From: Haliotis cracherodii | Lineage: Eukaryota | Assembly (NCBI RefSeq): GCF_022045235.1 | Contig: NW_027266272.1 | Span: 29,760,001 to 29,824,000 of the forward strand | Direction of reading: 5' to 3' | Length of the DNA stretch: 64,000 bases | Shown here: positions 14,001 through 59,853 of the stretch, in pieces | How positions within the stretch are numbered: the stretch's first letter is position 1 | Layout: every line of letters begins with the position of its first letter | The notes under the pieces: model-generated | Database searches by the model: none | What the model was told of the DNA's origin: nothing | The model's input: only the letters and a program-made list of their open reading frames with translations | Position numbers and translations under genes: made by a program

Positions 14001-14110
14001 TTATCTACTCTACCCTAATCGGTACTCTCCTTCTCTACCCTCTCTGTACTGTCCTACTCTAACCTACTCTGTACTGTCCTAATCTACTCTCTTTGTTATT
14101 GTCCTACTCT
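11040..14110. repeat. 25-bp pentamer-based satellite (TACTC TACCC TACTC TGTAC TGTCC), array 1
   Basis: Direct inspection. A higher-order 60/180-bp period is visible at ~13600-13980 (lines 13681 and 13861 are identical). Confidence 0.95.
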
Positions 14111-31599: not shown

Positions 31600-34500
31600 G
31601 CCTGCAACCTCCGTGTATCGCGGTACTTGTCATGTACGCTGAACGGAACAAAATGCACTCACTAACCTTTATGATTATTTGTGTTCTCTGTATCATACGC
31701 CATTTATTTTATCTAAATATGCACATTTTACTGATAAAAGTTCATTATTTCCATTCGTAGCGCCGAGTAAAAGCCAGGCCTCGCGCTCGGTTTGACAAGG
31801 GAGAGAACTCCATCGTATCGCGGTAAAGGGAAAAGTTGTGTATGGAGGCCCAAGTCAGACAAAAATGTTTACCTGCCACAAAGTATGATGATGCCAGACT
31901 TCGTGATTCATCCAGACAAGTGCAAAGACAGCACACAGGAAGAAAATGCATAAATAGTTCATTAGTCCCGAAATTTTTCAAAATCTAGAACAATGGAGTA
32001 ATAGGTTAACAGTTAAATAGTCACCAAGGAGACAGTTTAAACACAGTGGGGGCACTGGAATTCACCATGACGCCTTACAAATGTGGTATTTGTACAAAAT
32101 GACAGATGTGTCCAGTGTTGACATTTGTCACACTGAGCCCACTTGACAATCACCAGATAAGGGCATGACCTTAGTCCTGGTGGGGTGTGCTTGCCACAAA
32201 CACAGCAGTTCTCTGAATCATCCTCAGACACATCAGGAGATGAACCTTGTTCTGAGTCGGAACTGTTAACCCAAAATGAAGATGGACCTGGCTGAGGACT
32301 TGTAGGTTTGGAATGCTTGACACAGGCAGCACGTTTTGTCGAAGTAGTAGCAGATCTCTTCAAATGTGTACTCTTTGCTGGAATGTTGGTTTGATTCTGT
32401 AGCTTTTTTGTGCTTTTTGAGGACTGCATAATTTCAACATTTTTTTGCTTCAGAAGATTTCCAGTCAGAAACGGTGGCACAAATTTTTTCTTAGGTTTAC
32501 AGAAGACTTTTGTGATCCTCCGCTCTTGAAGAAACTGGCTTGTACTGGAAGCTGAAGGAACCTGAACTGGTGGTGTAACATCTGAACGGCTACCTGGGGT
32601 TTCATGCGTGGATTCTAAAGGTGGAGCATCCAGGGGTGCTTCATTTTCCTGATTTCCTTTGTCTGAGTGAGGATATATAGTTGCAGGTGCTACGGACAGA
32701 TCCTCAATAGTCTTGTTGGAAAAAGGATAAATCCCAGATTTCCAGAAAGCTGACGCCAAATTATCTGGAGACATTGCCCTCAAATATGGTTTGGCAGTGA
32801 GCTTGGCAATCTCGTATTAGGTGATTTTCACACCTGGATTCCGTTGAAGATACAACTGACATTCCCTGCTGTACATAGATTTAAAGGGCCCAAACACTGC
32901 AACATCCAGAGGCTGGGTGATATGACTGGTATGTGGTGGCAGGACAAACAAAATCACGTTGTGCTTCTTGGCCCAGTCAACTAGAGTTAAAGACACATGT
33001 GATCTATGGCCATCAAAGAGAACTAATGTTTTCGGTGACATCGGATCTGTGCTTATCCCTGCATGCTTCACAAAGTGTTTTGTGAGATAATTCTGAAATA
33101 TCTTTGCATTAGACCATCCACTGTCTGACATTTCTCCAGAAGATCCAGGTGGCGCTCCATCCAGGAACTGGTCATTCCACCTCTTGCCAGGGAAAACAAA
33201 GTATGGAGGAATGTGGTTACCAATGGCATTACCACCACCGATAATTGTAACTGTGGAAGATCTTGGTGATGTTACTGCTTGTGGTTGGGAAGTGGAGTCA
33301 CAGACGATCTTAGGAGGGGCATGCTCAGTACTGATCCCAGTCTCATCCATGTTGTAGATCCTTTCTGGATTATCTCGCAATTCATTAAAAGTCAAAATGG
33401 TGGCAAGCTCCTTAAAGTAGGAACGCAGTGCTTCGCGGGAGGCATATTGTGCTCTCAGCATGGATAGTTTCTGGGGTTTGGCAAGTTTAACTTCGGGCCA
33501 TCGCCTTAGAAACCCATAAAACTAGTTGTCACTAAGAGGTCTATCACTCTTAGTTTTTCTGCCACATGTCACTGCAAAATCGGCTGCCAGGTATTGCACA
33601 TTGAGCTTTGTGTAGCCATATCCTATGCTGGACATGTACTTTATGTGAGTGACTAACTGTTGCTCCTCTTTGTCAGACAAAAGCGTCTCTCCACCGGGCT
33701 TGGCATGGACAGGAACATTACCCCTTGTTCTGTCTCGAAGAGTTGACTCTGGAATTGTATACAAACGAGATGCACCATATACTGACATACCATCGCGAGT
33801 GGCATCATGGTCAAGTGCACGCTGCAAATTGGCAGCATCATATTGGCATCTAATTTTAACTGTCTTAGGCTGCTGAAAAGTTAGCTGCCTCCTTACTTTA
33901 ACAGTCTTGCTATCCTGAAAAGAGAAAAGGTAAGTAGAATTTAGTCTGTGCAATAAATAATAGGTATTACATGCATTCTTACCATTTTACCCCCCCAAAA
34001 TTAATTTAAAAAAAACACAAACAACAAGTATGAGTAAAATATTGTAAGATTTTTATGAAAAAAGGATCAACAGTATTTGTCAAAAAAATTGAAAAAATGT
34101 GTAAAAATATTGTTTTAAAAAACTTTTAAATATATACATAAAAGGCACTACAGAAAACTATAAATACACATTTTTTCGAATTTACCACTCCTTTTATGAC
34201 ACCATTATGTATTCAACATATTTGGCTCGAAGTCAGGAACGTACTGGTAAATATGGCATTATGGCCCTTATTATGTACCATACATTTCTGACAACTTAGC
34301 GGAAACAAATGTGTGGACTACGTCACTTCTGCTACCTTATTTGTCAACATGAATATGCAGACGACCTTGTTCAGGTCGACCGAGAAAGTTTACTTGAGAA
34401 AAAGCGGGTTATATCGAAGTCAATTGATAGATAGGGGTAAGGCACTATTTCAAAACATGCCAGAACTAAGTATCAATCTGTCTTTAAATGATTACTTACC

Positions 34501-34666: not shown

Positions 34667-36544
34667 TACTGCCCTTATCTACCAACTCTGTATTGTCCTA
34701 CTCTACTCTCTACTGTCCTATTCTACTCTGTACTGTCCTACTCTATCGTACTCTGTCCTGCTTTACTCTACCCTTCTCTGTACTGCCCTACTCTACTCTA
34801 CTCTGTACTGTCCTACTCTACTCTGTACTGTCCTACTCTATCGTACTATGTCCTAGTTTACTCTACCCAACTCTGTACTGTCCTACTCTATCCACCTCTG
34901 TCCTGCTTTACTCTACCCTACTCTGTACTGTCCTACTCTACCCTACTCTGTACTGTCATACTCTACCCTACTCTGTACTGTCCTACTCTACCCTACTCTG
35001 TACTGTCCTACTCTACCCTACTCTTTACTGCCCTACTCTACCCTTTTCTGTACTGTCCTACTCTACACTACTCTGCACTCTCCTACTCTGTACTATCCTA
35101 CTCTACACTACTCTGTACTGTCCTACTCTGTACTGTCTTACCCTATCAACCTCTGTCCTGCTTTACTCTACCCTACTCTGTACCGTCCCACTCAACCCTA
35201 CTCTGTACTGTCCTGCTCTACACTACTTTGCACTGTCCTACTCTCTACTGTCCTACTCTGTCCTGCTTTACTCTACTCTACTCTGTACTGTCCTTCTGTA
35301 CCCTACTCTGTACTGTCCCATTGCACACTACTCTGCACTGTCCTACTCTACTCTACTCTGTACTGTCCTAATCTACCCTACTCTGTACTGCCCTACTCTA
35401 CTCTACACTATCCTACTCTATTGTACTCTCTCCTGCTTTCCTCTACCCTTCTCTGTGCTGTCCTAATCTACCTTACTCTGTACTGTCTTACTCTACCCTA
35501 CTCTATACTGTCCTAATCTACCCTACTCTGTACTGCCCTACTCTACTCTAATCTGTACTGCCCATCTCTACTCTACTCTGTACTGTCCTAATCTCTACTG
35601 TCCTACACTGTACTGTCTGACTCTATGCACCTCTGTCCTGCTTTACTCTACCTTACTCTCTACTGTCCTACTCTACCCTACTCTGTACTGTCCTACTCTA
35701 CCCTACTCTTTACTGTCCTACTCTACCCTACTCTGTACTGTCCTACTCTCTACTGTCCTACACTGTACTGTCTTACTCTATCCACCTGTCCTGCTTTACT
35801 CTAACTTACTCTGTACTGTCCTACTCTACCCTACTCTTTACTGTCCATGTCTACCCTACTCTGTACTGTCCTACTCTTCACTACTCTGCACTGTCCTACT
35901 CTGTACTGTCTTACTCTATCAACCTGTCCTGCTTTACTCTACCCTAATCTGTACTGTCCCACTCAACCCTACTCTGTACTGTCCTACTCTGTACTGTCCT
36001 ACCCTTCAAATCTATCCTTTGTACTGCCCTACTTTACCGTATGCACTTTCCTTATCTGCACTGTCCACTACTCTATATATTTTCCAAGACTATCAAGCTC
36101 TTTAATGTCCACATTAAATACTTTACTGTAACACATCATGTCCTGTCATGATCTACACTTCTCAGTAATGCCCTTTTCTACTATGTACTGTCCTGCTGTA
36201 CCCTACTATGTATCGTCCAACTCTTCCCTCTATTATTCTACTCTATCCTCCTTCATACTGTTGTACTGTTCCCTCTACTCTATCCTCCGCTGTGCTGTCC
36301 GAATTTGCGCCCCTATTTATTGCTGTATCTGCACTGTCCACTACACTCTTTATTTTCCTAGACTAGCGCCCCCTACATTACATACTTTACCTTCCCATCA
36401 TATCCCATTCTAATCTATATTTCTCTATAATGCCCTCCACTACTATGCTACTATGTAGTATTGTACTATTCTACTGTCCGAGTCCGTCCTACTCTGTATT
36501 AATCTACTCTCTTTTATATTGTGCTACGCTTTCCTCCACTGTAC

Positions 36545-37615: not shown

Positions 37616-38632
37616 TAGCAGCGTTAGTGTTAGCCAACTAGTCATCATAATGATACCTTTAAAAGGACAAATTTATCCTAAAATTCCTTATGGAACCTTA
37701 ACTATTAGGCAGTTTGGCACTATAAGACCAGTGCAAAATTCTAACACCGAGTAGCCATTGTCACCAATATGTTCTTAATACAAACATGTGTGACTGGTAA
37801 ATTATTCCGACTGACTCAAAAGCTGGGTCACTCAGAGGAACACTGATCATAAATGAACATATATTGAAGCATATAATACAACTTCATCAGCAGTATACGG
37901 ATGGGAAACGTCTTTCCTTGGTGTTGCTGTAACTACAGCATTTTCAAAGTTATTTTCAGTTTCTGTCGGATGTCAAGGGATCGTGTAGTGTCGTGTCGTG
38001 TCGTGTCCATCTTCCCTCTCTCGACACTACTTCCTCTCCATCCTCTCTCCCTCGTGTCTACTTCCCCTTCATCCTCCCTCCCATGTCTCTACATCCCTTC
38101 CACCCAAACTCCCTACTTCCCTTCAACCCTCCGCCACCCCAACCTCACTAATCCCCACTCACTTACAATCCATTGTCTATGTCCCCTTCACCATTCCTAC
38201 TTTCCCTTCATTCTCCCTACCTCGGCTCTACTTCCCCTCCATCCTCCCTCCCATATCTCTACTTACCCTCCATCTTCCCTCCTTCATGTCTAGTTCCCCT
38301 CCATCCTCCCTCCGACATCTCTACTTACACTCCATCTTCCCTCTCACGTCTCTACTTCTCCTTCATCCTCCCTCCCGCTCAATCACTGGTCTATACTTGC
38401 CCTCCATCCCCCTTCCCATGTCTCCTTCCCTACCATCCTACCGTCTCATCTCTACTTCCCCTAAATCCTTCCTCCCTAGTCTCTACTCCCCTTCCACCCC
38501 CCCTCCCACGTCTCTACTTAACCTCCTTCCTCCCTCCCATGTCTCTAGTTCCCCTCCATCCCCCTCCCGTGTCTCTTCTCACCCTTCATCTTCCATCCCT
38601 CATTTCTACTTCTCCCTCCATCTCCCCTCCCC

Positions 38633-38882
38633 GACCAGTGAAGACCTGGGGTAGAATAGGTATTCAGCAACCCATACTTGCCATAAAAGAGGCAACTAAC
38701 GGGATGGGGTGGTCAGACTCGCTGACTTGGTTGATGCATGCAATCGATCCCATTTGCATGGATTGATGCTCATGATATCAATCACTGGATTGTCTGGTCC
38801 AGACTTAATTATTTACAGACCGCCGTCAAATACCTGGAATATTGCATTGTGCGGCATAACAAGAAACAAACCAAACCAACCA
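38633..38882 (+). mobile_element. SINE family 1
   Basis: gaccagtgaagacctggggtagaatagg head through to the (aacc/aaac)n tail. Confidence 0.85.
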
Positions 38883-40986
38883 ACACCCTCCATCCCTCTA
38901 CCACGTCTCTACTTCCCTACCATCCTACCGTCTCTTCTCTACTTCCTCTCTCCCTCAATTCTAATTCCCCTCAATCGTCAACCATCTTCCCTAACTCGTC
39001 TCCACTTCCACTCCATCATCCCTCCCACGCCTCTACTTCCCATCTATCATCCTTCCCACGTCTCTACTTACCCGCCATCCCCCTTCCTACGTCTCTATTT
39101 ATCCTCCATTCCCTACTCCTACGTCTCACTTCCCTACCATCCTGCCGTCTCTGCTCTACTTCCTCTCCATCCTCGCTCCCTAGTTTCTACTTTCCATTCT
39201 CACGTGTCTATTTCCAATCCATCATCCGTCCCACGTCTCTACTTACCCTCCATCCCCTATCCTCCCTTCCCTGTCACCTTACCCTCCATCCCCCTCCCAC
39301 GTCTCTACTTCCCCTCCATCCTCTCACTCTCTCTTGTCTACTTCCCTTCCATCATCCGTCCCACGTCTCTACTGCCCCTCCATCATCCCTCCCAAGTCCC
39401 TATTTCACGTCTATCTTCTCTCCCTCGTCTCTACTTCATCTTCATCCCCCTCCTACGTCATCTCCATTCCCCTCATAAGTCCCTACTTCCCTTCCATCCC
39501 CTCTCTCTCCAGTCTACTTCCAATCCATCATCCGTCCCACCTCTCTACTTCCCCTCCATCTTCCCTCCCACGTCTCTACTTCCCCTCCCTCCTCCCTCCC
39601 ATGTCTTTAGTTCACCTCCATCTTCTTCCTCTTGTCTCTACTTCCTCTCTCTTCTCTCTCCCTCTCATCTACTTCCTCTCCATCCTCTCTCCCTCTCGTC
39701 TACTTCCCCTCCATCTTCCCTTCCTCGTATCTACTTCCTCCATCCCCCATCCCACGTCTCTACTTCCCCTCCATCACCCGTTCTACGTCTCTACGTCATC
39801 TCTTCCCCTCCCTACGTCCCTACTTCCCCTCCATCCTCTCTCTTGTCTACTTCCAATCCATCATCCGTCACACCTCTCGACTTCACCTCCATCTTCCCTC
39901 GCACGTCTCTACTTCCTCTCCCTCCTCCTTCCCATGTCCTTAGTTCACTTCCATCTTCCCTCCCTCGTCCCTACTTCATCTCTACTTCATCTCTATTCTC
40001 TCTCCCTCTCATCTACTTCCTCTTCATCCTCTCTCCCTCTCGTCTACTTCCCCTCCATCATCCCTCACACGCCTCTACTTCCCCTCCATCTTCCCCTCCA
40101 GCATCCCTCCCTCGTCTCTACTTACCCTTTATCCCCATGCCTCTTCTTTACTTCCCCTCCATCCCCGCTCCCACGTCTCTACTTCCCCTCCATCATCTCT
40201 CCCGCGTCTTTACTTCCCTATATCATCTTTCCCACGTCTCTACTTCCCCTCCTTCCTAGCTCCCACGTCTCTGCTTCCCCTACATCTTCCCTCCCACGTA
40301 TCTACTTCCACTCCATCCCCCATCTCTACTTCCCCTCCATCCCCCTCCTACGTCTCTACGTCATCTCTTCCCCTCCCTACGTCCCTACTTCCCCTCCTTC
40401 CTCTCTCTCTCTCTTGTCTATTTCCAATCCATCATCCGTCCCACCTCTCGACTTCCCCTCCCTCCTCCCTCCCATGTCTTTAGTTCACCTCCATCTTTCC
40501 CCCTCCCCCCCCCCCCCCCCCCCCCCCCCCTACTTCATCTCTATTCTCTCTCCCTCTCATCTACTTCCCCTCCATCCTGGCGTCCACTTACCCTCCATCT
40601 TCCCTCCCTCTCCTCTACTTCACCTCCATCCCCCTCCTACGTCCCTACTTACCCTCCATCTTCCCTCCCTAGTCTCTACGTCCTTCCCCATCCGACGTCT
40701 CTGCTTTCCCTCCATCATCCGTTCCACGTCTCTACTTCACCTCCATCCCCCCTCCTACGTCTCTACTTCCCTCCATCCTCCCTTCTTTGTCACCTTCCCC
40801 TCCACCATCCGTCCCACGTCTCTACTTCCCCTCCATCCTCCCTCTCAGGCCACTACTTACCCTCCATCCCCCTTCCCACGTCTCTGCTGGTAATACTGGG
40901 CATTCCGCTGGCAAGATCTGGCTTCAGATGCGCAAAGCGATTTTAGTGCTAATGTTTGAGTTTCCCAAGTTAAGTAGTTTAAAATA

Positions 40987-41594
40987 TACTCTTCAAAAAA
41001 AGAAACTTTACGCTGACTTTTAAAATGTAATAGAATGCGATTGTTTCAAAATAGGACACAGAAACCATAATTGAAACATTGTTTGAAGATCAATGTACAC
41101 AATGTTCAAAACATTAATCGTGTCACCTAAACAGACACACGTACACGATACAGTTAATGTCACAGGGGTACAGAAAATGTCAGTACCAATTGTGCCCACC
41201 ACGTGCATCAATCACCGCTTGACGCCGACGACCCATAGATGCAATCAAGTTGTCAATAACACGCTGTTGGCTGGCTGCCATTCATGCTGAAGTGCATCAA
41301 GAAGAGCCGGAAGTGTTTGGGGCGGTGGATTCCTTCTGAGAACTCGTCGGTCCAACTCGTCCTAAATCTGGTGACCGGGCTGGCCAAGGTAATGTCTGGA
41401 TGTTGTTGTGCTCTAAGAAGTCCGGACAAACACGTGCAATATCCTGCAGGAACTGTCCGCCATGAACGTTGACGTGAGGAAGAACGTAAGGCTGTAGGAT
41501 CAAGTCTCTGCAACGCACACCTGTAAATGCACCTGCCACATGCACGAGAGGCGTCCTACCACCGTGATGAATTCCGGCCCATACTATGACACTC
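40987..41594 (-). pseudogene. Tc1/mariner transposase 3' fragment with right TIR
   Basis: SVIVWAGI, FLQDIAR and LPWPARSPDL in ORF 41297-41659; terminus tatactcttcaaaaaaagaaac. Confidence 0.85.
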
Positions 41595-42230
41595 TCTCTC
41601 TTGTCTACTTCTCCATTCTCTCTCCCTCTTGTCCACTTCCCCTCCATCATCCCTCCCACGTCTCTACTTCCCCTATACCATCCTTCCCACGTCTCTACTT
41701 CCCCTCCATCATTGCTCCCACGTCTCTACTTCCCTCCACCCTCGCTCCCACGTCTGTACTTCCCTCCGTCCTCTCTCTCTCATCTACTTCCTCTCGATCC
41801 TCTCTCTCGTCTACTTCCCCTCCATCTTCCCTCCTCGTCTTTACTTCACCTCCATCCCCCCCTCCTACGTCCCTACTTAACCTCCATCTTCTCTCCCTCG
41901 TATCTACTTCCACTCCATCCCCCATCCCACGTCTCTACTTCCCCTCCATCACCCGTTCCACTTCTCTACTTCCCCTCCATCCCCCTCCTACGTCTCTACG
42001 TCATCTCTTCCCCTCCCTACGTCCCTACTTCCCCTCCATCCTCTCTCTCTCTCTCTCTCTTGTCTACTTCCAATCCATCATCCGTCCCACCTCTCGACTT
42101 CCCCTCCATCTTCCCTCCCACGTCTCTACTCCCACTACATCCCTCATGCCTCCCTCCAACATCCCTCCTACTCCTCCATCATCCCTACTCCTCCATCATC
42201 CCTACTTACCCTCCATCCTTCATACCTTAC

Positions 42231-42392
42231 CGGCTCGCTGACTTGGTTGATGCATGTCGTATCCCAATTGCGTGGATCGATGCTCATGATATTAATCACT
42301 GAATTGTCTGGTCCAGACTCGATTATTTACAGACCGCCGTCATATAGCTGGAATATTGCTGAGTACGGCGTTAAACAACAAACCAACCAAAC
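42231..42392 (+). mobile_element. SINE family 1, 5'-truncated
   Basis: ggctcgctgacttggttga...ggcgttaaacaacaaaccaacc. Confidence 0.85.
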
Positions 42393-42689
42393 AATCATAC
42401 CTTACCGCCAACATCCCTACTTCTCCTCCATCATACATACTTCAATTCCTAATGACTTCGAGTTACCTCCATTATCCCTACTTCACCTTCATCTTTCCTA
42501 CTTACCCTCCACCCCCTGTGCCTTCCCTCCATCATCCCTACTTCCCCTCCATCCCACATGAATTCCCTCCATCCCACATGAATTCCCTCCATCCCACATG
42601 ACTTCCCTCCATCATCCCTACTTCCCCTCCATCCTTCATACCTTACCGCCAACATCCTAAATTCTCCTCCATCACACCTACTTCAACTC

Positions 42690-44450
42690 AATCCCCCATG
42701 CCTTCCCTCCATCATACCTACTTCCACTCTATCCATCATCCCTACTTCCACTCCATCTATCATGCCTTCCCTCCATCATACCTACTTCCACTCCATCTAT
42801 CATGCCTTCCCTCCATCATGCCTACTTCCACTCCATCCATCATGCCTACACTCCATCATACCTACTTCCACTCCATCCATCATGTCTTCCCTCCATCATA
42901 CCTACCTCCACTCCATCCATCATGTCTTCCCTCCATCATACCTACTTCCACTCCATCCAGCATGCCTTCCCTCCATCATACCTCATTCCACTCAATCCAT
43001 CCCCCATCCCTCATACCTCACCTCCAACATCCCTACTTCCACTCCATCCATCATGCCTTCCCTCCATCATACCTCATTCCACTCAATCCACCCCCAATCC
43101 TTCATACCTTACATCCAACATCCCTACTTCAATTCTATCAATCATCCCTACTTCCACTCCATCCATCATGCCTTCCCTCCATCATGCCTACTTCCACTCA
43201 ATCCATCATCCCTACTTCCACTCCATCCAGCATGTCTTCCCTCCATCATACCTACTTCCGCTCCATCCAGCATGCCTTCCCTCGATCATGCCTACTTCCA
43301 CCCCATCCAGCATGCCTTCCCTCCATCATACCTCATTTCACTCAATCCACCCCCTATCCCTCATACCTCACCTCCAACATCCCTACTTCCACTCTATCCA
43401 TCATCCCTACTTCCACTCCATCCATCATGCCTTACCTCCATCATACCTACTTCCACTCCATCCATCATACCTCCATCCATCATGCCTACTTCCTCTCCAT
43501 CCAGCATGCCTTCCCTCCATCATGCCTACTTCCACTTCATCCATCATGCCTTCCCTCCATCATACCTCATTCCACTCAATCCACCCCCCATTCCTCATAC
43601 CTTACATCCAACATGGCTACTTCCATTCTATCAATCATCCCTACTTCCACTTCATCCATCATGCCTTCCCTCCATCATGCCTACTTCCACTCCATCCATC
43701 ATGCCTTTCCTCCATCATGCCTACTTCCACTCCATCCATCATGCCTACTTCCACTCCATCCAGCATGCCTTCCCTCCATCATGCCTACTTCCTCTCCATC
43801 CAGAATTCCTTCCCTCCATCATGCCTACTTCCACTCTATCCATCATGCCCTCCCTCCATCATACCTACTTCCACTTCATCGAGCATGCCTTCCCTCCATC
43901 ATACCTCATTCCACTCTATCCATCATGCCCTCCCTCCATCATACCTACTTCCACTTCATCGAGCATGCCTTCCCTCCATCGTACCTACTGCCATGCCACT
44001 CCATCCAGCATGCCTTCCCTCCATCATGCCTACTTCCACTTCATCCAGCATGCCTTCCGTCCATTATGCCTACTTCCACTTCATCCAGCATGCCTTCCCT
44101 CCATCATACCTACTTCCACTTCATCCAGCATGCCTTCCGTCCATTATGCCTACTTCCACTTCATCCAACATGCCTTCCCTCCATCATGCCTACTTCCACT
44201 CAATCCATCATGCCTTCCCTCCATCATGCCTACTTCCATTCCATCCAGCATGCCTTGCCTCCATCATACCTACTTCCACTCCATCCATCATGCCTTCCCT
44301 CCATCATGCCTACTTACACTCCATGCAGCATGCCTTCCCTCCATCATACCTGCTTCCACTCCATCCATCATGCCTTCCCTCCATCATGCCTACTTCCACT
44401 CCATCATGCCTTTCCTCCATCATGCCTACTTCCCCTCCATCTCACTCTTA
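42690..44450. repeat. 40-bp minisatellite (catgccttccctccatcatacctacttccactccatccat)
   Basis: Direct inspection; made of two related ~20-bp halves. Confidence 0.92.
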
Positions 44451-47681: not shown

Positions 47682-48814
47682 GGAGGGGGCGAGGGTTATC
47701 TTGTTCCAGCTAAACAGTGGAAACACATAAACTGTGCATACGCTGGACATGTTGGACGTGCTGGAAAATGTGTTGTCAAGAAATAAGTTGTTCAGCTCCT
47801 TTCACAGAAAATAAAAGTAGTGCCGCAACAAACATCACCTCCCCGCCAGAGAAAATTAAATGGTTGTTCCTTAGGGCGTCTGTCGTTGAAGACATCCACT
47901 GTATCTAGAAATGTAGGAATGGGTGTCCACATTGTCTACGGACGCCATAGATAAGGGACAAACTCTATCATCCGGGGCTTTTACCGAGACCCTAGTTTGT
48001 GGGAACGTCCTGTTTCCGCATCTGTTGTACGAGACGGGACATTCCTGTGTCGGATCATTGAAGCGCACACACACTGAGACAGTGGTTTCAAGACAGCATT
48101 AACAGTCAGGCAAGGGCTCGTAAGGTAATCATAGTTAAACTTGTATATATGTTTTACTTCTAACTTTCTGATATTATTAAGTACATGTATATAAGGTATC
48201 ATGAATACAGCAGTCCTTCGGCTTCAAGAAGAACAGTTACCATTGTAACGTGTTTTACACTTAAAGGCAAAAGTATTGTGATTATGTTGGTTTTAAGATT
48301 AAATTGCTCTGGCGTATAATTGTCTTTCTAATGGCGTATGTCTTAAAGTTATGATAAAAATTGTTATTTTCATCTACGTTAGACAAATATACCAAGTTTG
48401 AAAGGAAAGGAATATTTGAATATCCCCAATAGGCATTAAAACAGCAAACTACTCTTGTTCGTCTTATCAGGTACTTTTTGTGTACACAACAGATCCAAAA
48501 CAAGATAGTCCCTGTCAACATAAGTGTTATTTTCAGTTCTTTAGTATTAATATGATCACAGTTAGTTTTAACTTTGAGAAATGTATGAACTATGACTGAA
48601 ACCTTGTGATATTGAACACCCCATAATCGTTTATCCAGTGCATTTTGTACGTCCATTTCATTAAAAAAAATATTCCTTTGACCGATTCGCTACCAAAGTT
48701 TCTTTTTTAATCCGATTCAAATACACGACGCTACAACGAGAAAACTTCTGTGCCGAGTTGGGGTAACGTCACTTCGTCACTATAAAGGAAACACGAACTT
48801 ATAGCAACCTGTAT

Positions 48815-49000
48815 TTCCATGCTTGTTGTAAGAGACGACTAAATGGATTTGGTTGCCAGCTCAGTGACATGTTAATTGTGTGTCATCGTACCCTGACTAC
48901 GCGGCACATTGCTCATAATACCAATCACTGGTGTGCCTGGTCCAGACCCAATTATTTACAGGTCGCCCTGATGTAGCTGGAATATTGCTGACTGGGGCAT
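48815..49000 (+). mobile_element. Degenerate SINE family 1 copy
   Basis: ccatgcttgttgtaagagacgactaa ... tagctggaatattgctga. Confidence 0.65.
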
Positions 49001-49232
49001 TTTAAGCTTTCCTCATCAACATGTCAAACCATATCGGTTAGTGTGTGAACTCTTTCATTTTTGAAATATGATGCTACTAACTGATCTTGAAACAAATTAT
49101 AATCTTTAAGAATAATACACTTCAAAATAGTTTTACAGACACATAAAAGAGGTTCACATATTGAAGTTACCTAAGTTACTCCGCCCGTGTTTGGTTCAGT
49201 AATAAGCGTACGAAGTTTCATTTAACCTTTTG

Positions 49233-49473
49233 GTGGGCAGGGGCTGGCCCAGTCGTCTATGGCGCCACAATTTGCTGTGCAGAGTTGCGTCCCTTGAGCA
49301 CACCAGACGCCTATGATTGTGGTTTCGAATCCCGGTACCCATGTTCGTGGGTTTCACGAAAGTTGTAAACCTCTGAGACCTGCATCACTTCAGGCTTTCC
49401 TCCAGCATTACGCTGACACACCGTGACATAATGGGAATACTGTTAAATGCAGCGTGATACCAAAATCACTCAC
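49233..49473 (+). mobile_element. SINE family 2
   Basis: A-box-like tggcccagtcgtctatgg and B-box-like gtttcgaatcc; (cact)n tail; TSD tcatttaac.ttttg (49218-49232 / 49474-49488). Confidence 0.85.
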
Positions 49474-50029
49474 TCATTTAACGTTTTGATTCGGTTTGTT
49501 TTCGTGCTTTTCTTGGAACTTTTCAAGAACTGCATTTCATGATGACCAACTTCTTACCACGAGACGGCTTGGAGCATTAGAAACCGTTACGTTCAGTTGA
49601 ATGATCTATGATATGAACTGAGCTATGATGTTAACAAAGTTTAGTATTAAGCTATAAATAACTCCTTATTTAACACAGGTGCCGTATACTGGGTCGTACA
49701 AAGGACAACTTGGATTTTCTTACTAAATCCATTCTCCTTTCAATTCAAGAAAATTAATGTCAGAAATCGAGTTGTTGTATGAAACAGCGACTATTGAATG
49801 ATCGGTTCCTCGGGGTTACACTACATGTCGCAAACAGTCATGTTTTTTTGTGGTAACGGTTAAAACGTCAGACATTTCGTGGTAAATAACACATATTGTT
49901 ATGGACAGACTGGGGTTTAACCAGCGAGCTATTTTTGGGGCACCCGATCGGCTACATGTGATAATTCCCACTTGAAGTTTAAGCATCGTCACTTACTTCA
50001 CAATGGCTATTTCCTGATAAATAGTCATG

Positions 50030-50330
50030 CCACTTCCTATGCATGAGCAAGACGTTTCGGTTTCAGTGTTATTAATATCACAGGCCATATATGGGAATTC
50101 CCATGTCTGGTCATATCCTAACTATGCTTGTAAGAATATATAAACATGCTTGCTAGGTTCAGGTCTCAGTTGAGTTCAAAAGGCGCGTGTAACAGGAAGA
50201 CGTCTTACGGACAGGAGTGGACCCGGAGTTATACCAGGTACCAGTTAAGACACTGCTCTCCACTTCCGGTCAGTGCCAGTTCGCACATTCCTCCCCACTT
50301 CCGGTCAATACTGTCTCCCATTTCCGGTCA
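50030..50330 (+). promoter_or_regulatory. Candidate immune-inducible promoter of the LRR gene: ISRE, kappaB, TATA, Inr and ETS cluster
   Basis: GTTTCGGTTTC 50054-50064; GGGAATTCCC 50093-50102; TATAAA 50139-50144; Inr TCAGTT 50166-50171 (A+1 is 29 nt after the TATA start); cca(c/t)ttccggtca x3 at 50260, 50295 and 50318. Confidence 0.6.
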
Positions 50331-51157
50331 GTGCGAGGTGTAATATGTCTTTGGCGTCTATTGGGTCCGGCATTTAGCATTGAAAATACATGCTCCAAGT
50401 GTCTATTCCCTCGATTGGGTCTCATTGAATGTGTCTGTTCAGTCAATAGCCCTGAAGGCGTCCTTTTTGACGTGTTTGTATGGCAGACTATTGAAGTCGT
50501 CTGTATGAAGTGGCAATATTGTAGACCTATAGGGATCCATATGTTTTAGCCATTGATTATTTATTCATCAGTAATCATTCACATTGAGTATTCACCAATG
50601 AGTAGAACTTGGTTTAAATAACTCTTCTCACAATGCTGTTTCTGGTGACTTTTCATTTTCTTCTGTCAGTGTGCTGCCCCAAGTGCGTCATGTCGCATGT
50701 GCTTACAATAGCGATAGCCACATCTAAATTACACTAAACGAGACGCACCACTTCTGTACGTTAGTCACTGCAGTGCAGTCCATGTATACGTGATGCCTGC
50801 ATTCGATCAGTAATTAAAGACCTGAAAAGACATGGGGCAAGCTGAAAAGACTACGTTGGGTATTTATGCACAAATTTGGTATCATCCCTGTTCCATAGTG
50901 ATTAATAAACGCATGCTTATAATATAGTCGAAATCGTACAATGGACTCTGATTTTAGTAGAGACTTCTTATGATTATGGAAAATATTTTTGTCGCTTTTA
51001 TTTATATTGCGTTGAAATATGTCGTGGCATTCCTATGCAAGCAAATCAAAAATTAATTGGGTCATGGTGATTTATATTGCGCTTTTATAAATATTTGTCA
51101 GGTGTTTTGTAATTTGATCAATAAACCTGCTGATTACCTGTTTCAGACACAACAAGG

Positions 51158-52402
51158 ATGGGAGGGAACCACAGCTGGCTCACAACACTGGTCGTCCTCA
51201 GTCAACTCGTGATGACAACGACAGCCTGCGCAGGATGCGTGTGCTTCGCTACTTTCGCTACGTGTTCTGACATTAAACACGTGACAACTCTCCCGTCCAA
51301 TATCGAGACACTAGTTGTCAGGGACATCACAGTGGAATCACTGCCGAGCTTTGCGTTCAGTCATCTGAAACAGCTGACCGAACTTGATATTCAGTCTTCA
51401 TACATTGGCGTTGTTCGTAAGAATGCATTTAGTGACATTGACAAACTAGACGTGCTGTCGATATCGTTCAGTGACATATCAGTTGTTGAGAATGGAGCCT
51501 TTTACGGCCTTAGAGGCATGTCGTCTCTGGAAATAAGTGATACCAGACTCGATAAAATCGAAATGGATTCGTTCTCGGATATCACTGATATCAGCGATAT
51601 TACCGTGAAATCATGCAACATCTCGGTTATTGGGAAAATGGCGTTTCATAATGTATCCACTGTTGACGTTTTTCAGTTTTACGAGAACAGGGTTGACGTT
51701 ATTGAAGCTGATGCGTTTTCAAACTGGAGAAACATCAGAACTGCCAACGTCAACTCAAATAGATTCGAAAGATTCGAATGTATTTCTGACAAATCGTTCG
51801 CAGTTGCCTTTTCATTCAATTTCTACAAGAATTATCTGACATGCGAATGCCATACAGCTTGGATTCTTACATCGCCGTATCTAAAAGGACATTTATTGTC
51901 GAACATGTGTTTTGCCCCGAAGAGTCAAGTAGACTTGAGCATGTCTTCTGTAACAAGGGCCGATCTCAGTTGCCCTTTCAACCCATCGCCATTACAGATG
52001 GGGTGCCCTTCTGACGCAGCAGTGACGTCACCTCCCGTCGTTAATGATACAACTACGTCACGTCACTCACGAATGACGTCGTCAACCATGTCTACAACGC
52101 CTTCTACATCTACAACCAACTCTCAAACTGAGACTTCTACAGAATATGAGTCAACGTCAACATCAAAGACTCCAACTATTGAGACAGAAACGCCAACGGT
52201 GGCCGACTTCTCGCATTCATCATTCATTGCTACAACCACTTCTGGTGAGAACTCCGGAAGTGACGCGCCTTCATCAACTGACCAGTCAGCAACCAGTGTG
52301 TCTCCCAGTACTTCCGGGCAATCCTCGAGAGGGACCAACCCACAAGTTCACGTCCCAACACTGCTGGCTATTGTCATGTTACTTTGTACTATCATAGTAT
52401 AG
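51158..52402 (+). CDS. Cell-surface leucine-rich repeat protein (signal peptide, LRRNT, ~7 24-aa LRRs, LRRCT, Ser/Thr-rich stalk, hydrophobic C-terminus/probable GPI signal), 414 aa
   Basis: Non-repetitive ORF with CAGCVC...C cap, LxxLxIxxxxIxxVxxxAF repeats, NYLTCEC..W..C..C, and a TLLAIVMLLCTIIV end with no cytoplasmic tail. Splice acceptor tttcag at 51141-51146 just before the ATG; AATAAA at ~52884. Confidence 0.92.
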   Translation: MGGNHSWLTTLVVLSQLVMTTTACAGCVCFATFATCSDIKHVTTLPSNIETLVVRDITVESLPSFAFSHLKQLTELDIQSSYIGVVRKNAFSDIDKLDVLSISFSDISVVENGAFYGLRGMSSLEISDTRLDKIEMDSFSDITDISDITVKSCNISVIGKMAFHNVSTVDVFQFYENRVDVIEADAFSNWRNIRTANVNSNRFERFECISDKSFAVAFSFNFYKNYLTCECHTAWILTSPYLKGHLLSNMCFAPKSQVDLSMSSVTRADLSCPFNPSPLQMGCPSDAAVTSPPVVNDTTTSRHSRMTSSTMSTTPSTSTTNSQTETSTEYESTSTSKTPTIETETPTVADFSHSSFIATTTSGENSGSDAPSSTDQSATSVSPSTSGQSSRGTNPQVHVPTLLAIVMLLCTIIV

Positions 52403-53104
52403 ACACATCCTGCATGGGATAGACCGACAACGTCAGAGACATTTGCATGGAGAACATTGTATATTTTGGATAGTACATATAGTGATCAGCCCAATATATA
52501 CACAGAACAAGGACCACGCCATACCACATTTAATATACAGATGTGAATGGACTCATATGTCATACGTTTCGATCAGTTACCACGCTTTAGCGTGTTCCTC
52601 GTCAGAATTGTTTTGTTTTTATTTTTGTTTTGCTCTATTGTCACATTTCATCCACGTGTTTGAAATGACCTTGTGGTGATGAGAAACACCTAGAAGGATC
52701 ATGCTCTTACATGGAAACACTATCGCTAGTTTGTGATGGTGATATATGTGACAGGAGTGTGTTGTATATACTGAATATGTCGGTGTGATGTCATGTGAAC
52801 CAACAAATTAAACTTGACTCATGTAATTTTTTATGTAAATAGTTAGCTCCTTATTTATCAGGTTTTGTCAAATGTTTTTTAGAAATAAACATATCATTTT
52901 TATACTACAATGTAAAATGCATTCCTCTCCAAAAATATAATAGCAAATACACATTTCAATGAATATAAATAGGAATCTCCTTTTGGCTATTTCGAGATAG
53001 ATAAATGTTGCTACATGTAGGTGTGAGAGGACACGGATTTCCGATTTTCGGGACTTGAGGCATGATGAAGTGCCGGATGCGACACCATAGTATTTACATA
53101 AAGT

Positions 53105-53480
53105 AGGGAATACTCAGTATTTCGTCCAAGAAAACTGGAAATGAGACAGTTGTTGCTTGCTGGTACTCTGTTAAATGTAGAGACACCGATTTACTCTTTC
53201 CCTAGGAAGCTATGTGGCCACTGGTGGCCCAGCAATCTAAGGCGAATCGATTCACATTGCAGAGATGCGTCCCTTACGAGTCTGGATCCTCAGATCGTAG
53301 TTTACCATACCAGTTTCGGTTGATATGATTTGAAAGCATCACATTGGTCCTCGTGGGGTTTTAACAAATCGGTGAACATATACAACATGCGACACGTCGG
53401 GCTTTCCTCCCACATCAAGCTGACGCATCGTGATATAACTAAAATACTGTTCAAAGCGGTCCAACTTACTAACTGTATGG
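53105..53480 (+). mobile_element. Degenerate SINE family 2 copy (recognisable from ~53220)
   Basis: ggtggcccagcaatctaaggcg ... gatataactaaaatactgttcaaagcgg. Confidence 0.5.
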
Positions 53481-53524
53481 ATAAATGAATCAACGGAATT
53501 TATTCCGAGTTAGAATTGGTTTTC

Positions 53525-53759: not shown

Positions 53760-56230
53760 TTGTCAGATACGTAAAGAGATTCATACCAGAAGGCGTCACA
53801 TATGTAAGGTAATTTACATCAGCAGTTGTCTGATACGTATATTGATTTACACCAGCAGTTGTCAGACACGTAAAGTGATTTACACCAGCAGTTGTCAGAT
53901 ACGTAAAGTGATTTACACCAGAAGTTGTCAGACATGTAAAGTGATACACACCAGCAGTTGACAGATACGTAAAGTGATTTACACCAGAAGTTGTCAGATA
54001 CGTAAAGTGATTTACACCAGAAGTTGTCAGACACGTAAAGTGATTTACACCAGCAGTTTTCAGATACGTAAACTGATTTACACCAGTAGGTGTCACATAT
54101 GTTAAGTGTTTTACACCAGCAGTTGTCCGATACGTATATTGATTTACACCAGAAGTTGACAGATATGTAAAGTGATTTACACCAGAAGTTGTCACGTATG
54201 TAAAGTGTTTTACACCAACAGTTGTCAGATACGTAAAGTGATTTATGCCAGCAGTTGTCAGATACGTATATTGATTTACACCAGCAGTTGTCAGACACGT
54301 ATATTGTTTTACACCAGCAGTTGTCAGACACTTATATTGCTTTACACCAGCAGTTGTCAGATACGTATATTGATTTACATCAGCAGTTGTCAGATACGTA
54401 TATTGATTTACACCAGCAGTTGTCAGATACTTAAAGTGATTTACACCAGCAGTTGTCAGATACTTAAAATGATTTACACCAGAAGTTGTCAGATACGTAA
54501 AGTGATTTACACCAGAAGTTGACAGAAATGTAAAGTGATTTACTCCAGAAGTTGACAGATACATAAAGTGATTTACACCAGAAGTTGTCAGATACGTAAA
54601 ATAAATTAACTCCAGAAGTTGACAGATACGTAAAGTGATTTACACCAGAAGTTGTCAGATACGTAAAGTGATTTACACCGGAAGTTGACAGATATGTAAA
54701 GTGATTTACACCAGAAGTTGTCAGATACGTAAAGTGATTTACACCAGAAGTTGTCAGATACGTAAAGTGTTTTACACCAGCAGTTGTCCGATACGTATAT
54801 TGATTTACACCAGCAGTTGTCAGACACGTATATTAATTGTTTTACACTAGCAGTTGTCAGATACTTAAAGTGATTTACACCAGAAGTTGTCACGTATGTA
54901 AAGTGTTTTACACCAGCAGTTGTCAGATACGTAAAGTGATTTACACCAGCAGTTTTCAGATACGTAAACTGATTTACACCAGAAGGTGTCACATATGTTA
55001 AGTGTTTTACACCAGCAGTTGTCCGATATGTATATTGATTTACACCAGCAGTTGTCAGATACTTAAAGTGATTTACACCAGCAGTTGTCAGATACATAAA
55101 GTGATTTACACCAGAAGTTGACAGATATGTAAAGTGATTTACTCCAGAAGATGACAGATACGTAAAGGGATTTACACCAGAAGTTGTCAGATACGTAAAG
55201 TGATTTACACCAGAAGTTGACAGATATGTAAAGTGATTTACACCAGAAGTTGTCAGATACGTAAAGTGATTTACACCAGAAGTTGTCAGACACGTAAAGT
55301 GATTTACACCAGCAGTTTTCAGATACGTAAACTGATTTACACCAGTAGGTGTCACATATGTTAAGTGTTTTACACCAGCAGTTGTCCGATACGTATATTG
55401 ATTTACACCAGCAGTTGTCAGACACGTATATTGTTTTACACCAGCAGTTGTCAGATACTTAAAGTGATTTACACCAGAAGTTGTCAGATACGTAAAGTGA
55501 TTTACTCCAGAAGTTGACAGATACGTAAAGGGATTTACACCAGAAGTTGTCAGATACGTAAAGTGATTTACACCAGAAGTTGTCAGATACGTAAAGGGAT
55601 TTACACCAGAAGTTGTCACGTATGTAAAGTGTTTTACACCAGCAGTTGTCAGATACGTAAAGTGATTTACACCAGAAGTTGACAGATATGTAAAGTGATT
55701 TACACCAGAAGTTGGCAGATACGTGAAGTGATTTACACCAGAAGTTGTCACGTATGTAAAGTGTTTTACACCAACAGTTGTCAGATACGTAAAGTGATTT
55801 ATGCCAGCAGTTGTCAGATACGTATATTGATTTACACCAGCAGTTGTCAGACACGTATATTGTTTTACACCAGCAGTTGTCAGACACTTATATTGCTTTA
55901 CACCAGCAGTTGTCCGATATGTATATTGATTTACATCAGCAGTTGTCAGATACGTATATTGATTTACACCAGCAGTTGTCACATATGTCAAGTGTTTTAC
56001 ACCAGCAGTTTTCAGATACGTAAAGTGATTTACACCAGAAGTTGTCAGACATGTAAAGTGATACACACCAGCAGTTAACAGATACGTAAAGTGATTTACA
56101 CCAGCAGTTTTCAGATACGTAAAGTGATTTACACCAGAAGTTGTCAGATATGTAAAGTCATTTACCGTGGCAGTTATTTATACTGCCAGTTTTCAGATGA
56201 TATGTAAAGTGGTTTATTCTGGCAGTTGAC
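53760..56230. repeat. 33-bp minisatellite (gtcagatacgtaaagtgatttacaccagaagtt), ~70-75 units with higher-order blocks
   Basis: Direct inspection; 11-aa period in the minus-strand ORFs. Confidence 0.95.
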
Positions 56231-59316: not shown

Positions 59317-59853
59317 GTACCTAACCCCAATGATCATAAAGCTAGGATTGATTGATCGTAAAGGGGATCCAAGGGCTGAGGATAGAGTTCGGGTAAACTT
59401 ATAGCCACTAAATGGGTACCTAACCCCAATGATCATAAAGCTAGGATTGATTGATCGTAAAGGGGATCCAAGGGCTGAGGATAGAGTTCAGGTAATCTTA
59501 TAGCCACTAAATGGGTACCTAACCCCAATGATCATAAAGCTAGGATTGATTGATCGTAAAGGGGATCCAAGGGCTGAGGATAGAGTTCGGGTAATCTTAT
59601 ATGGGTACCTAACCCCAATGATCATAAAGCTAGGATTGATTAATCGTAAAGGGGATCCAAGGGCTGAGGATAGAGTTCGGGTAATCTAATATGGGTACCT
59701 AACCCCAATGATCATAAAGCTAGGATTGATTGATCATAAAGGGGATCCAAGGGCTGAGAATAGAGTTCGGGTAATCTTATAGCCACTAAATGGGTACCTA
59801 ACCCTAATGATCGTAAAGGGGATCCAAGGGCTAAGGATATAGTTCGGGGTATC
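59317..59853. repeat. 99/90-bp tandem repeat, ~5.5 copies
   Basis: Unit starts (gtacctaacccc) at 59317, 59416, 59515, 59605, 59695 and 59794. Confidence 0.93.

What the first reader, a model, noticed from the sequence alone, without database searches (positions are those of the whole stretch)
50030..50340. Compact IRF + NF-kB + ETS promoter resembling a vertebrate interferon-pathway gene in an invertebrate
Within ~120 bp upstream of a TATA/Inr pair at canonical spacing lie a consensus ISRE (GAAACCGAAAC on -), a palindromic kappaB site (GGGAATTCCC) and an ETS core (cacttcct at 50031). Three more CCGGAA ETS sites follow the Inr, just after a possible donor cag|gtacca at 50238. The next acceptor I noticed directly precedes the LRR ATG (51146). 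The motifs are seen directly; their function and link to the LRR gene are inferred. Molluscs have IRF and Rel factors, but their direct targets are poorly mapped.
Basis: partly seen in the sequence, partly recalled or inferred. Interest (0 to 1): 0.75.

Follow-up and report, generated by a model that had tools for sequence, protein, structure and literature searches.

The report
Candidate immune-type promoter, abalone LRR gene
A short stretch about 1 kb upstream of an expressed abalone cell-surface LRR gene carries textbook IRF, NF-kB, TATA and initiator motifs in promoter-like order, but whether transcription starts there or responds to infection is still unproven.

Summary
Singly they are chance-level. 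Together they are rare: an ISRE-like and a kB-like site within 100 nt occurred in 2% of simulated 64-kb sequences. This is the only locus common to two genome-wide lists, ISRE..kB (97 rows) and kB..TATA..Inr (45 rows). The stretch is single-copy, and the genome encodes IRF and Rel factors.

The LRR gene is expressed. In 3 of 3 RNA-like runs its contig starts at 51141-51146, at the proposed acceptor. The highest-expressing run rises from depth 3.5 upstream to 264.5 over 49727-50268 and 39.8 in the proposed intron. The other two runs show no exon-1 signal, and no 50237/50268-to-51147 joint is among the 15 of 85 joints shown.

My reading at 0.42: a real, perhaps conditional, distal promoter of the LRR gene. 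A proximal start near 51140, a longer upstream transcription unit and chance remain open. Inducibility, factor binding and motif conservation could not be tested.

The scan noted similar ISRE or NF-kB promoter motifs on other DNA of this genome, not at this locus. Interest is modest.

The parts
50031..50038 (-). ETS-like core (AGGAAGTG on the minus strand)
   Evidence: Read directly. MGGAAGTG has 7 hits in the window.
50054..50064 (-). ISRE / IRF-E-like site GAAACCGAAAC, at -114 to -104 relative to A50168
   Evidence: It is the only GAAANNGAAAC in the 64-kb window.
50093..50102 (.). Palindromic kB site GGGAATTCCC, at -75 to -66
50137..50144 (+). TATA box TATATAAA, at -31 to -24
   Evidence: It forms the only TATA-Inr pair at canonical spacing in the window.
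50166..50171 (+). Initiator-like TCAGTT, with the proposed +1 at A50168
   Evidence: The start site itself is not shown by any read data.
50168..50268 (+). Putative non-coding exon 1. Candidate donors are CAG|GTACCA at 50237|50238 and CCG|GTCAGT at 50268|50269.
   Evidence: ATG-free plus-strand stretch 50149-50344. X6 contig 49727-50268 ends exactly at 50268 with mean depth 264.5. Inferred only: no junction was seen.
50238..50337 (-). 35-nt tandem duplication carrying three ETS-type sites: CCGGAAGTGG twice and CCGGAAATGG once on the minus strand. Each copy also reads CCG|GTCA on the plus strand (GTCAGT in copies 1 and 3, GTCAAT in copy 2).
   Evidence: (families D1, D2).
50269..51146 (+). Putative 5'-UTR intron (starts at 50238 if the first donor is used). 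It holds a high-copy repeat at about 50810-50983. The acceptor is CCTGTTTCAG|A.
   Evidence: X6 contig 50317-50982 at depth 39.8 against 2539.9 for the CDS; X19 depth of about 20,600 over 50810-50983. Sequence.
51147..52786 (+). Coding exon of the LRR gene. The CDS is 51158-52402 (414 aa): signal peptide, LRRs, Ser/Thr-rich stalk and hydrophobic C-terminal tail. The 3' end is near 52779-52873.
   Evidence: ORF. LRR_8 at 1.4e-20. Closest solved chains are LRIG1 and TLR13/TLR3 ectodomains. Contigs of X1, X2 and X6 cover 51141/51144/51146 to 52779/52786.

Best explanation
The stretch 50031-50171 is a real Pol II core promoter (TATA at -31, initiator at 50168) with an IRF site at -114/-104 and a Rel/NF-kB site at -75/-66. 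It drives a short ATG-free non-coding exon. That exon ends at 50237 or 50268 and is spliced to the acceptor at 51146|51147, 12 nt before the start codon of a single-coding-exon, probably GPI-anchored, LRR surface protein. I propose it is a distal, conditional promoter used when the gene is highly expressed, with IRF and Rel proteins of the abalone supplying inducibility. The ETS sites would supply basal or cell-type activity.

Shown: the motifs, their order and spacing, single-copy status, expression of the LRR gene, and the presence of IRF and Rel genes.

Inferred: the start site, the splice, factor binding and inducibility.
For: - Motifs and spacing were read directly.
- The combination is rare: ISRE and kB within 100 nt in 2% of simulated windows, and 0 four-part clusters in 20 Mb simulated.
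- Genome-wide, only this locus is in both the ISRE..kB list (97 rows against 48 control) and the kB..TATA..Inr list (45 against 20 control).
- The 356-nt stretch matches only itself in the genome. The DNA-like run X19 covers 49592-50635 at an even depth of 32-39.
- The LRR coding-exon contigs start at 51146 (X1), 51144 (X2) and 51141 (X6). In X2 this contig overlaps the low-depth intron contig by exactly 30 letters (51144-51173), as expected at a branch of a 31-word assembly graph.
- X6, the run with the deepest CDS (2539.9), has depth 3.5 over 49533-49744, 264.5 over 49727-50268 and 39.8 over 50317-50982. A rise therefore lies inside the candidate promoter and exon 1, and one contig ends exactly at the donor-like CCG|GT at 50268.
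- The plus strand is ATG-free over 50149-50344.
- IRF and RHD domains are encoded in the genome.
- Mollusc and shrimp IRFs act on ISRE elements (passages read in PMC5557890 and PMC4602278).
Against: - No joint from 50237 or 50268 to 51147 is among the 15 of 85 joints listed.
- X1 (CDS depth 13.5) has zero depth over 49592-50635.
- X2 contig 50047-50533 crosses both donors unbroken at depth 6.08, against 129.5 for the CDS. At most about a tenth of its transcripts could carry exon 1.
- X6's elevated contig starts at 49727, not near 50168. Its CDS contig runs 6-9 letters into the proposed intron.
- Contig depth is a mean per contig, and the tool warns that contigs cannot show starts, ends or strand.
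- Genome-wide, neither pattern is clearly enriched once repeat families are removed. By my count by eye, about 30 of 97 and about 20 of 45 rows are repeats or duplicates.
- Promoter divergence in X6 (17 substitutions in 529 letters) lies between the CDS (34 in 1447) and the intron (28 in 655), so there is no conservation signal.
- The ATG-free gap is not rare: 6 of 202 local gaps are as long.
Confidence: 0.42

Rival explanations
1. The LRR gene is intronless and starts at a proximal, TATA-less initiator inside what the reader called the acceptor (TTTCAGAC, start about 51138-51146, leader 12-20 nt). The upstream cluster then drives a separate short or non-coding transcript, acts as an enhancer, or does nothing for this gene.
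For: - CDS contigs of 3 of 3 RNA-like runs begin at 51141-51146 with no upstream exon attached.
- X1 has no contig over 49592-50635.
- X2 contig 50047-50533 is unbroken at both donors.
- X6's CDS contig includes TTTCAG plus 3 more letters (all).
- A distant paralog (L009) has TATAAAAA about 35 nt upstream of a similar CCCAGAC, 29 nt before its ATG.
Against: - In X2 the CDS contig and the intron contig overlap by exactly 30 letters. This implies a second predecessor at 51144 and so a junction, not just a start.
- No well-placed TATA exists: AATAAA is only about 23-25 nt upstream and TATAAATA about 58 nt upstream.
- X6 shows 39.8 depth in the 'intron' against 3.5 further upstream, which a start near 51140 does not explain.
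- The sequence is a good acceptor with a pyrimidine-rich tract.
Confidence: 0.25
2. The stretch lies inside a longer transcription unit that starts upstream of 49727, or of 48200, possibly in a repeat-derived first exon or on the minus strand. The 'promoter' would then be exon or intron sequence, and the motifs would be incidental.
For: - X6's elevated contig spans 49727-50268, covering the ISRE, kB and TATA themselves.
- X2 has depth 0.5-6.4 in the single-copy bins from 48200 to 50809 but 0 in the three bins after the gene (52898-53400). That fits low-level transcription entering from upstream.
- On the minus strand, GGATTTA|GTAAGA at about 49724 reads as a donor, and the three CCGGAAGTGG-type sites are oriented for a minus-strand promoter.
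Against: - A plus-strand leader from 49727 would carry many upstream ATGs; 8 lie between 50003 and 50146 alone.
- At a uniform 264.5 this exon would account for only about a tenth of X6's CDS depth.
- No ORF or Rfam family lies in the stretch.
- Strand cannot be read from contigs.
Confidence: 0.15
3. This is a chance co-occurrence of short motifs in AT-rich intergenic DNA with no regulatory role. It was picked out because the reader looks for ISRE and kB motifs.
For: - Each motif alone is at chance level.
- Genome-wide counts of the two composite patterns are close to their reversed-pattern controls once repeats are removed.
- The same scan flagged ISRE or NF-kB motifs at several other loci of this genome, so many places were inspected.
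- There is no conservation signal.
Against: - By my arithmetic, the full ordered cluster is expected about 0.1-0.2 times per genome. That takes about 25 non-repeat kB-TATA-Inr loci and an ISRE density of 1.5-3 per 64 kb.
- It sits at a plausible distance from an expressed gene that needs an upstream exon or start.
- In X6 contig depth rises within the stretch.
Confidence: 0.18

Closest known systems
Shrimp Vago4 regulatory region with an IRF-bound ISRE (PMC4602278; passages read)
   Same: An invertebrate gene with a predicted ISRE close to its start. In that case an invertebrate IRF was shown by reporter assay and EMSA to bind and activate through the ISRE.
   Different: There the ISRE lies in the 5' UTR, and binding and induction were shown experimentally. 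Here nothing is shown beyond sequence, the target is an LRR surface protein rather than a cytokine-like peptide, and a kB site lies beside the ISRE.
Oyster IRF2/IRF8 and TRAF6 acting on mammalian ISRE, IFN-beta and NF-kB reporters (PMC5557890; passages read)
   Same: It shows that mollusc IRFs recognise vertebrate-type ISRE sequences and that the NF-kB arm exists. This makes binding at the two sites here plausible.
   Different: Those assays used human reporter elements in human cells, and no natural mollusc target promoter was mapped in the passages read. The present locus would be a natural target, but it is untested.
Vertebrate virus-inducible promoters that combine IRF and kB sites, such as the IFN-beta enhancer and many interferon-stimulated genes (recalled knowledge, no call)
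   Same: IRF and kB sites lie within about 50 nt of each other and within about 120 nt of a TATA box.
   Different: No ATF/Jun site is evident, and no interferon gene is involved. The spacing between the IRF and kB sites (28 nt) is looser than in the IFN-beta enhancer. Orthology is out of the question, so the resemblance is one of logic only.
Other ISRE or NF-kB promoter modules noted in this genome by this scan (s1-844298, s1-832050, s1-831994, s1-845453; AI notes)
   Same: Same genome, same motif types and a promoter-proximal position.
   Different: Those modules are reported as conserved among tandem paralogs. This locus is unique in the genome and has no close paralog (best 27% identity), so no paralog footprinting is possible.

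Membership tests
IRF/NF-kB co-regulated immune promoter (vertebrate ISG / IFN-beta type logic) | ISRE / IRF-E consensus (GAAANNGAAAS) | tested here: met
   GAAACCGAAAC at 50054-50064 on the minus strand. The consensus itself is recalled.
IRF/NF-kB co-regulated immune promoter (vertebrate ISG / IFN-beta type logic) | kB consensus (GGGRNWYYCC) close to the IRF site | tested here: met
   GGGAATTCCC at 50093-50102, 28 nt from the ISRE.
IRF/NF-kB co-regulated immune promoter (vertebrate ISG / IFN-beta type logic) | Sites lie within about 200 nt upstream of a mapped transcription start | tested here: inconclusive
   Only contigs were available. X6 depth rises within 49727-50317, X1 and X2 show no exon-1 signal, and no junction is among the 15 of 85 joints shown.
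IRF/NF-kB co-regulated immune promoter (vertebrate ISG / IFN-beta type logic) | Trans-acting IRF and Rel factors are encoded by the organism | tested here: met
   PF00605 matches at two loci and PF00554 matches at two loci, all over the curated cut-off.
IRF/NF-kB co-regulated immune promoter (vertebrate ISG / IFN-beta type logic) | Induction of the gene by viral or bacterial challenge, and factor binding | not testable with these tools
   Run descriptions are coded and only contigs were served. There are no binding data.
IRF/NF-kB co-regulated immune promoter (vertebrate ISG / IFN-beta type logic) | Motifs conserved in orthologous promoters above background | tested here: inconclusive
   None of the differences listed for X2, X6 and X19 falls in the ISRE, kB or TATA, but 176 further differences were not shown. 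Overall promoter divergence is no lower than neutral.
Focused TATA + initiator core promoter | TATA box and initiator with the A about 28-34 nt after the first T of the TATA box | tested here: met
   TATATAAA at 50137 and TCAGTT with the A at 50168, a spacing of 31. It is the only such pair in the window, against 0.34 expected.
Gene with a 5'-UTR intron | GT donor, pyrimidine tract plus AG acceptor, and a junction seen in RNA | tested here: inconclusive
   Donors at 50238 and 50269 and an acceptor at 51146 are present. CDS contigs start at the acceptor in 3 of 3 runs, and X2 shows a 30-letter overlap there. No junction row was shown.
Repeat- or LTR-derived promoter | The stretch recurs elsewhere in the genome | tested here: not met
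   Window 49990-50345 matches only itself. X19 depth of 32-39 over 49592-50635 matches the single-copy level.
Known structured RNA gene | Match to an Rfam family | tested here: not met
   0 matches at E <= 1 over 48500-53500.

The most novel reading that the evidence does not exclude
This would be a natural, compact IRF plus Rel/NF-kB co-regulated TATA promoter in a gastropod. It would work as a distal, infection-inducible alternative promoter that switches a GPI-anchored LRR surface receptor to high expression. That would make it one of the first direct IRF/NF-kB target promoters mapped in a mollusc. It would also be evidence that the paired IRF-kB promoter logic is older than vertebrate interferons.
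Probability: 0.2. Interest if true: 0.6.

Novelty: new member of a known kind. Interest (0 to 1): 0.3.

Why it matters
Molluscs have IRF, Rel, STING and RLR signalling. In the open papers I could search, their IRFs were mostly tested on human reporter elements, so natural target promoters are scarce. A validated abalone promoter with one ISRE and one kB site next to a TATA box would give a simple native reporter for antiviral and antibacterial signalling in a farmed and endangered group. It would also tie a lineage-specific LRR surface protein to that response. As it stands, this is a well-formed candidate, not a demonstrated element.

Tried and rejected
Orthologous promoters
- The protein search found only 2 distant hits at 26-31% identity and no ortholog.
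- G000 has no relatives in the genome search.
- No cross-species footprinting was therefore possible beyond the partial variant tables.

Paralog footprinting
- The nearest paralog is 27% identical.
- The 1.5 kb upstream of 11 paralog ORFs shows no ISRE+kB cluster. One lone ISRE-like site lies 63 nt before the L005 ATG.
- Those ORF starts are only the first Met of the longest open frame.

Genome-wide recurrence of the module
- The counts were 97 rows against 48 control and 45 against 20 control. Much of the excess comes from repeat families.
- I then looked for genes downstream of 15 compact hits.
- One gene was identified, PBZ+HPF1 downstream of C6:17454262. One hit sits before a rhodopsin-type GPCR exon. 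Two of the ORFs tested are transposase remnants.
- No enrichment for immune genes could be claimed.

Other checks
- TE or LTR origin is rejected.
- A structured-RNA gene is rejected.
- The ORF at 50217-50549 (110 aa, GTG start) was set aside as non-coding without a test.
- Contig depths cannot be pushed further: the tool itself warns that depth is one figure per contig.
- Supplementary files of papers were not asked for. None seemed to bear on this locus.

Full report
OBSERVATION

- CACTTCCT at 50031-50038.
- GTTTCGGTTTC at 50054-50064, which is GAAACCGAAAC on the minus strand.
- GGGAATTCCC at 50093-50102.
- TATATAAA at 50137-50144.
- TCAGTT at 50166-50171. Its A at 50168 lies 31 nt after the first T of the TATA box.
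- CAG|GTACCA at 50237|50238.
- Three TTCCGG cores at 50264, 50299 and 50322.
- TTTCAG|ACAC at 51146|51147, 12 nt before the ATG of a 414-aa ORF at 51158-52402.

The three downstream ETS-type sites are products of a local 35-nt tandem duplication (families D1 and D2). They count as one event, not three. Each copy also reads CCG|GTCA on the plus strand (GTCAGT in copies 1 and 3, GTCAAT in copy 2). It can therefore be taken as a 5' splice site as well as an ETS site.

CHANCE

Singly the motifs are unremarkable.
- The ISRE 11-mer with up to 1 mismatch gives 1 hit against 0.54 expected.
- The degenerate kB pattern gives 6 hits against 4.46 expected.

The combination is not ordinary.
- An ISRE-like and a kB-like site within 100 nt occurred in a fraction 0.02 of 300 first-order Markov simulations of 64 kb.
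- The TATA-Inr pair is the only one in the window, against 0.34 expected per 64 kb.
- No ordered four-part cluster arose in 20 Mb of simulated sequence.

In the real 1.18-Gb genome:
- GTTTCNNTTTC-N5-80-GGGRNNYYCC has 97 rows against 48 for the reversed-pattern control.
- GGGRNNYYCC-N10-80-TATAWAWR-N18-24-TCAKTY has 45 rows against 20.
- By my count by eye, about 30 and about 20 of those rows are repeat-family members, overlapping duplicates or (TA)n. Neither pattern is clearly enriched.
- Only this locus appears in both lists.

My arithmetic takes about 25 non-repeat kB-TATA-Inr loci and an ISRE density of 1.5-3 per 64 kb. It gives roughly 0.1-0.2 such clusters per genome by chance. The definitions were chosen after the fact. 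The scan has also flagged ISRE or NF-kB motifs at several other loci of this genome. The real significance is therefore weaker than that figure.

WHAT THE STRETCH IS NOT

- It is not a repeat or an LTR. Window 49990-50345 matches only itself in the genome. The DNA-like run X19 covers 49592-50635 at an even 32-39.
- By contrast, the flanking stretches 48896-49069, 49244-49591 and 50810-50983 reach about 22,000, about 2,000,000 and about 20,600.
- No Rfam family matches 48500-53500 at E <= 1.

THE GENE

- The ORF has LRR_8 repeats at 1.4e-20.
- Its best solved relatives are generic extracellular LRR ectodomains: LRIG1, TLR13, TLR3, LGR4 and Slit.
- By eye it has a signal peptide, a Ser/Thr-rich stalk and a hydrophobic C-terminal tail.
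- It is single-copy, with the nearest paralog at 27% identity.
- It has no close relative in the protein collection (2 hits at 26-31% identity).

RNA EVIDENCE (contigs only, so no true starts, ends or strand)

Three runs behave as RNA, with very uneven depth: X1, X2 and X6. X19 behaves as DNA.

The LRR exon is expressed in all three RNA-like runs.
- X1: a contig of 1641 letters at depth 13.5 lies on 51146-52786.
- X2: a contig of 1658 letters at depth 129.5 lies on 51144-52589 and 52638-52779.
- X6: a contig of 1666 letters at depth 2539.9 lies on 51141-52588 and 52638-52779.
- In addition, 18 RNA-like runs from 8 studies hold 35-56% of the sampled words of 50100-52800.

- The three CDS contigs begin within 6 nt of the proposed acceptor.
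- In X2 the CDS contig and the low-depth contig 50505-51173 (depth 5.1) overlap by exactly 30 letters. That is what a branch in a 31-word graph gives, so some second sequence precedes 51144.
- The shared letters CAG are what the donor ...CCAG| at 50237 would leave. X1's start at 51146 (a shared G) is what ...TCCG| at 50268 would leave.
- In X6, depth is 3.4-3.5 over 48393-48787 and 49533-49744. It is 264.5 over 49727-50268 and 39.8 over 50317-50982.
- The 'intron' is thus about ten times deeper than the far upstream sequence, and 1.6% of the CDS depth. Transcription appears to begin somewhere in 49727-50317. One contig also ends exactly at 50268.
- Suppose the 264.5 is a mean of a 101-nt exon and background at 3.5. 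The implied exon depth is then about 1800, close to the CDS depth. This is my arithmetic, and it is a weak inference.

- None of the 15 joints shown (of 85) links 50237 or 50268 to 51147. All those shown lie in the repeats at 48991-49380.
- X1 has zero depth over 49592-50635.
- X2 contig 50047-50533 crosses both donors unbroken at depth 6.08.
- X6's elevated contig begins at 49727, 440 nt upstream of the proposed start. Its CDS contig includes TTTCAG plus three more letters.
- X2 has depth 0.5-6.4 in the single-copy bins from 48200 to 50809, yet 0 after the gene. This hints at transcription entering from further upstream.

A model that reconciles the three runs has a proximal start, or another exon, used at low expression. 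The distal TATA promoter would be used in the high-expression state seen in X6. This is a hypothesis, not a result.

CONSERVATION

- X2/X19 and X6 differ from the window by about 1.5-2.3% in the CDS.
- In X6 the promoter contig has 17 substitutions and 13 gap letters in 529. The intron contig has 28 substitutions and 11 gap letters over its 655 aligned letters. The CDS contig has 34 in 1447.
- None of the listed differences hits the ISRE, kB, TATA or Inr. A 4-nt deletion at 50156 in X6 shortens the TATA-Inr spacing to 27.
- However, 176 differences were not shown. With about 35 motif positions out of about 540, no hit among about a dozen listed changes is what chance gives.

PLAUSIBILITY OF THE MECHANISM

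- The genome encodes at least two IRF-domain loci and two Rel-homology loci.
- Oyster IRF2 and IRF8 activate human ISRE and IFN-beta reporters (PMC5557890, passages read).
- A shrimp IRF binds an ISRE in the Vago4 5' UTR (PMC4602278, passages read).
- For PMC8218723 I read two passages only. It reports human ISRE reporters again.
- My four searches turned up no natural mollusc promoter with mapped ISRE and kB sites. Subscription journals are not covered. I recall, without a call, work on the oyster IFN-like protein promoter.

SIDE RESULTS

- One genome-wide ISRE..kB hit (C45:38809579-38809629, plus strand) lies 9.6 kb upstream of a Rel-homology exon on the same strand.
- Another hit (C6:17454262) carries an ISRE, GGGAATTCCC, a second GGGATTCCC and a TATA-like box. 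It lies 3.8 kb upstream of PBZ and HPF1 exons. A look-alike promoter is at C25:717592.
- These suggest that such modules are in use in this genome, but they say nothing direct about this locus.

LIMITS

- Read laying served contigs only and truncated its joints and loose-ends tables.
- Earlier AI notes name the organism as black abalone. I did not check that.

VERDICT

- The promoter reading is plausible and partly supported, at about 0.4.
- The immune-inducible reading is an untested inference.
- If real, this is a new member of a known kind of element.

Noticed in passing
window 48896-49069, 49244-49591, 50810-50983: Three interspersed high-copy repeats bracket the candidate promoter and sit in the putative intron. 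In the DNA-like run X19 their summed contig depth is about 22,000, about 2,000,000 and about 20,600, against about 32 for single-copy sequence. Most joints and loose ends reported by read laying come from them.
   Followed up: no
G000:C45:38809579-38809629 (+), not fetched: An ISRE (GAAACTGAAAC on the minus strand) and a kB-like GGGGTTTTCC lie 9.6 kb upstream, on the same strand, of a Rel-homology-domain exon at C45:38819271. This may be the promoter or an enhancer of a Rel/NF-kB gene.
   Followed up: no
L044 1263-1400 (G000:C6:17454262...), and G000:C25:717592-717709: A compact module of ISRE, GGGAATTCCC, GGGATTCCC and a TATA-like box lies 3.8 kb upstream of exons encoding a PBZ zinc finger (3.9e-12) and HPF1 (5.3e-21). 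A very similar promoter sequence occurs on another contig.
   Followed up: partly
window 11059-14112, 24944-31600, 34698-36002, 38197-44441, 53760-56165, 59317-59818: Much of the window is minisatellite arrays with units of 25, 31, 40, 33 and 99 nt and strong strand asymmetry. The LRR gene sits in a repeat-rich, gene-poor neighbourhood.
   Followed up: no
window 41297-41659 (-): An ORF embedded in the 31-nt satellite looks, by eye, like a Tc1/mariner-type transposase remnant. It was not tested against Pfam.
   Followed up: no
window 52590-52637: The contigs of X2, X6 and X19 laid on the 3' UTR break across a T-rich low-complexity tract. The tool says reads seem cut there, and X1's contig runs across it. 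X2, X6 and X19 also carry an extra A behind 52693.
   Followed up: no
L008 and L009 (G000:C5:10.37-10.46 Mb): Distant LRR paralogs carry a similar CCCAGAC element 24-29 nt before their ATG. In L009 it lies about 35 nt downstream of TATAAAAA. This element may be an initiator rather than an acceptor in this gene family.
   Followed up: partly
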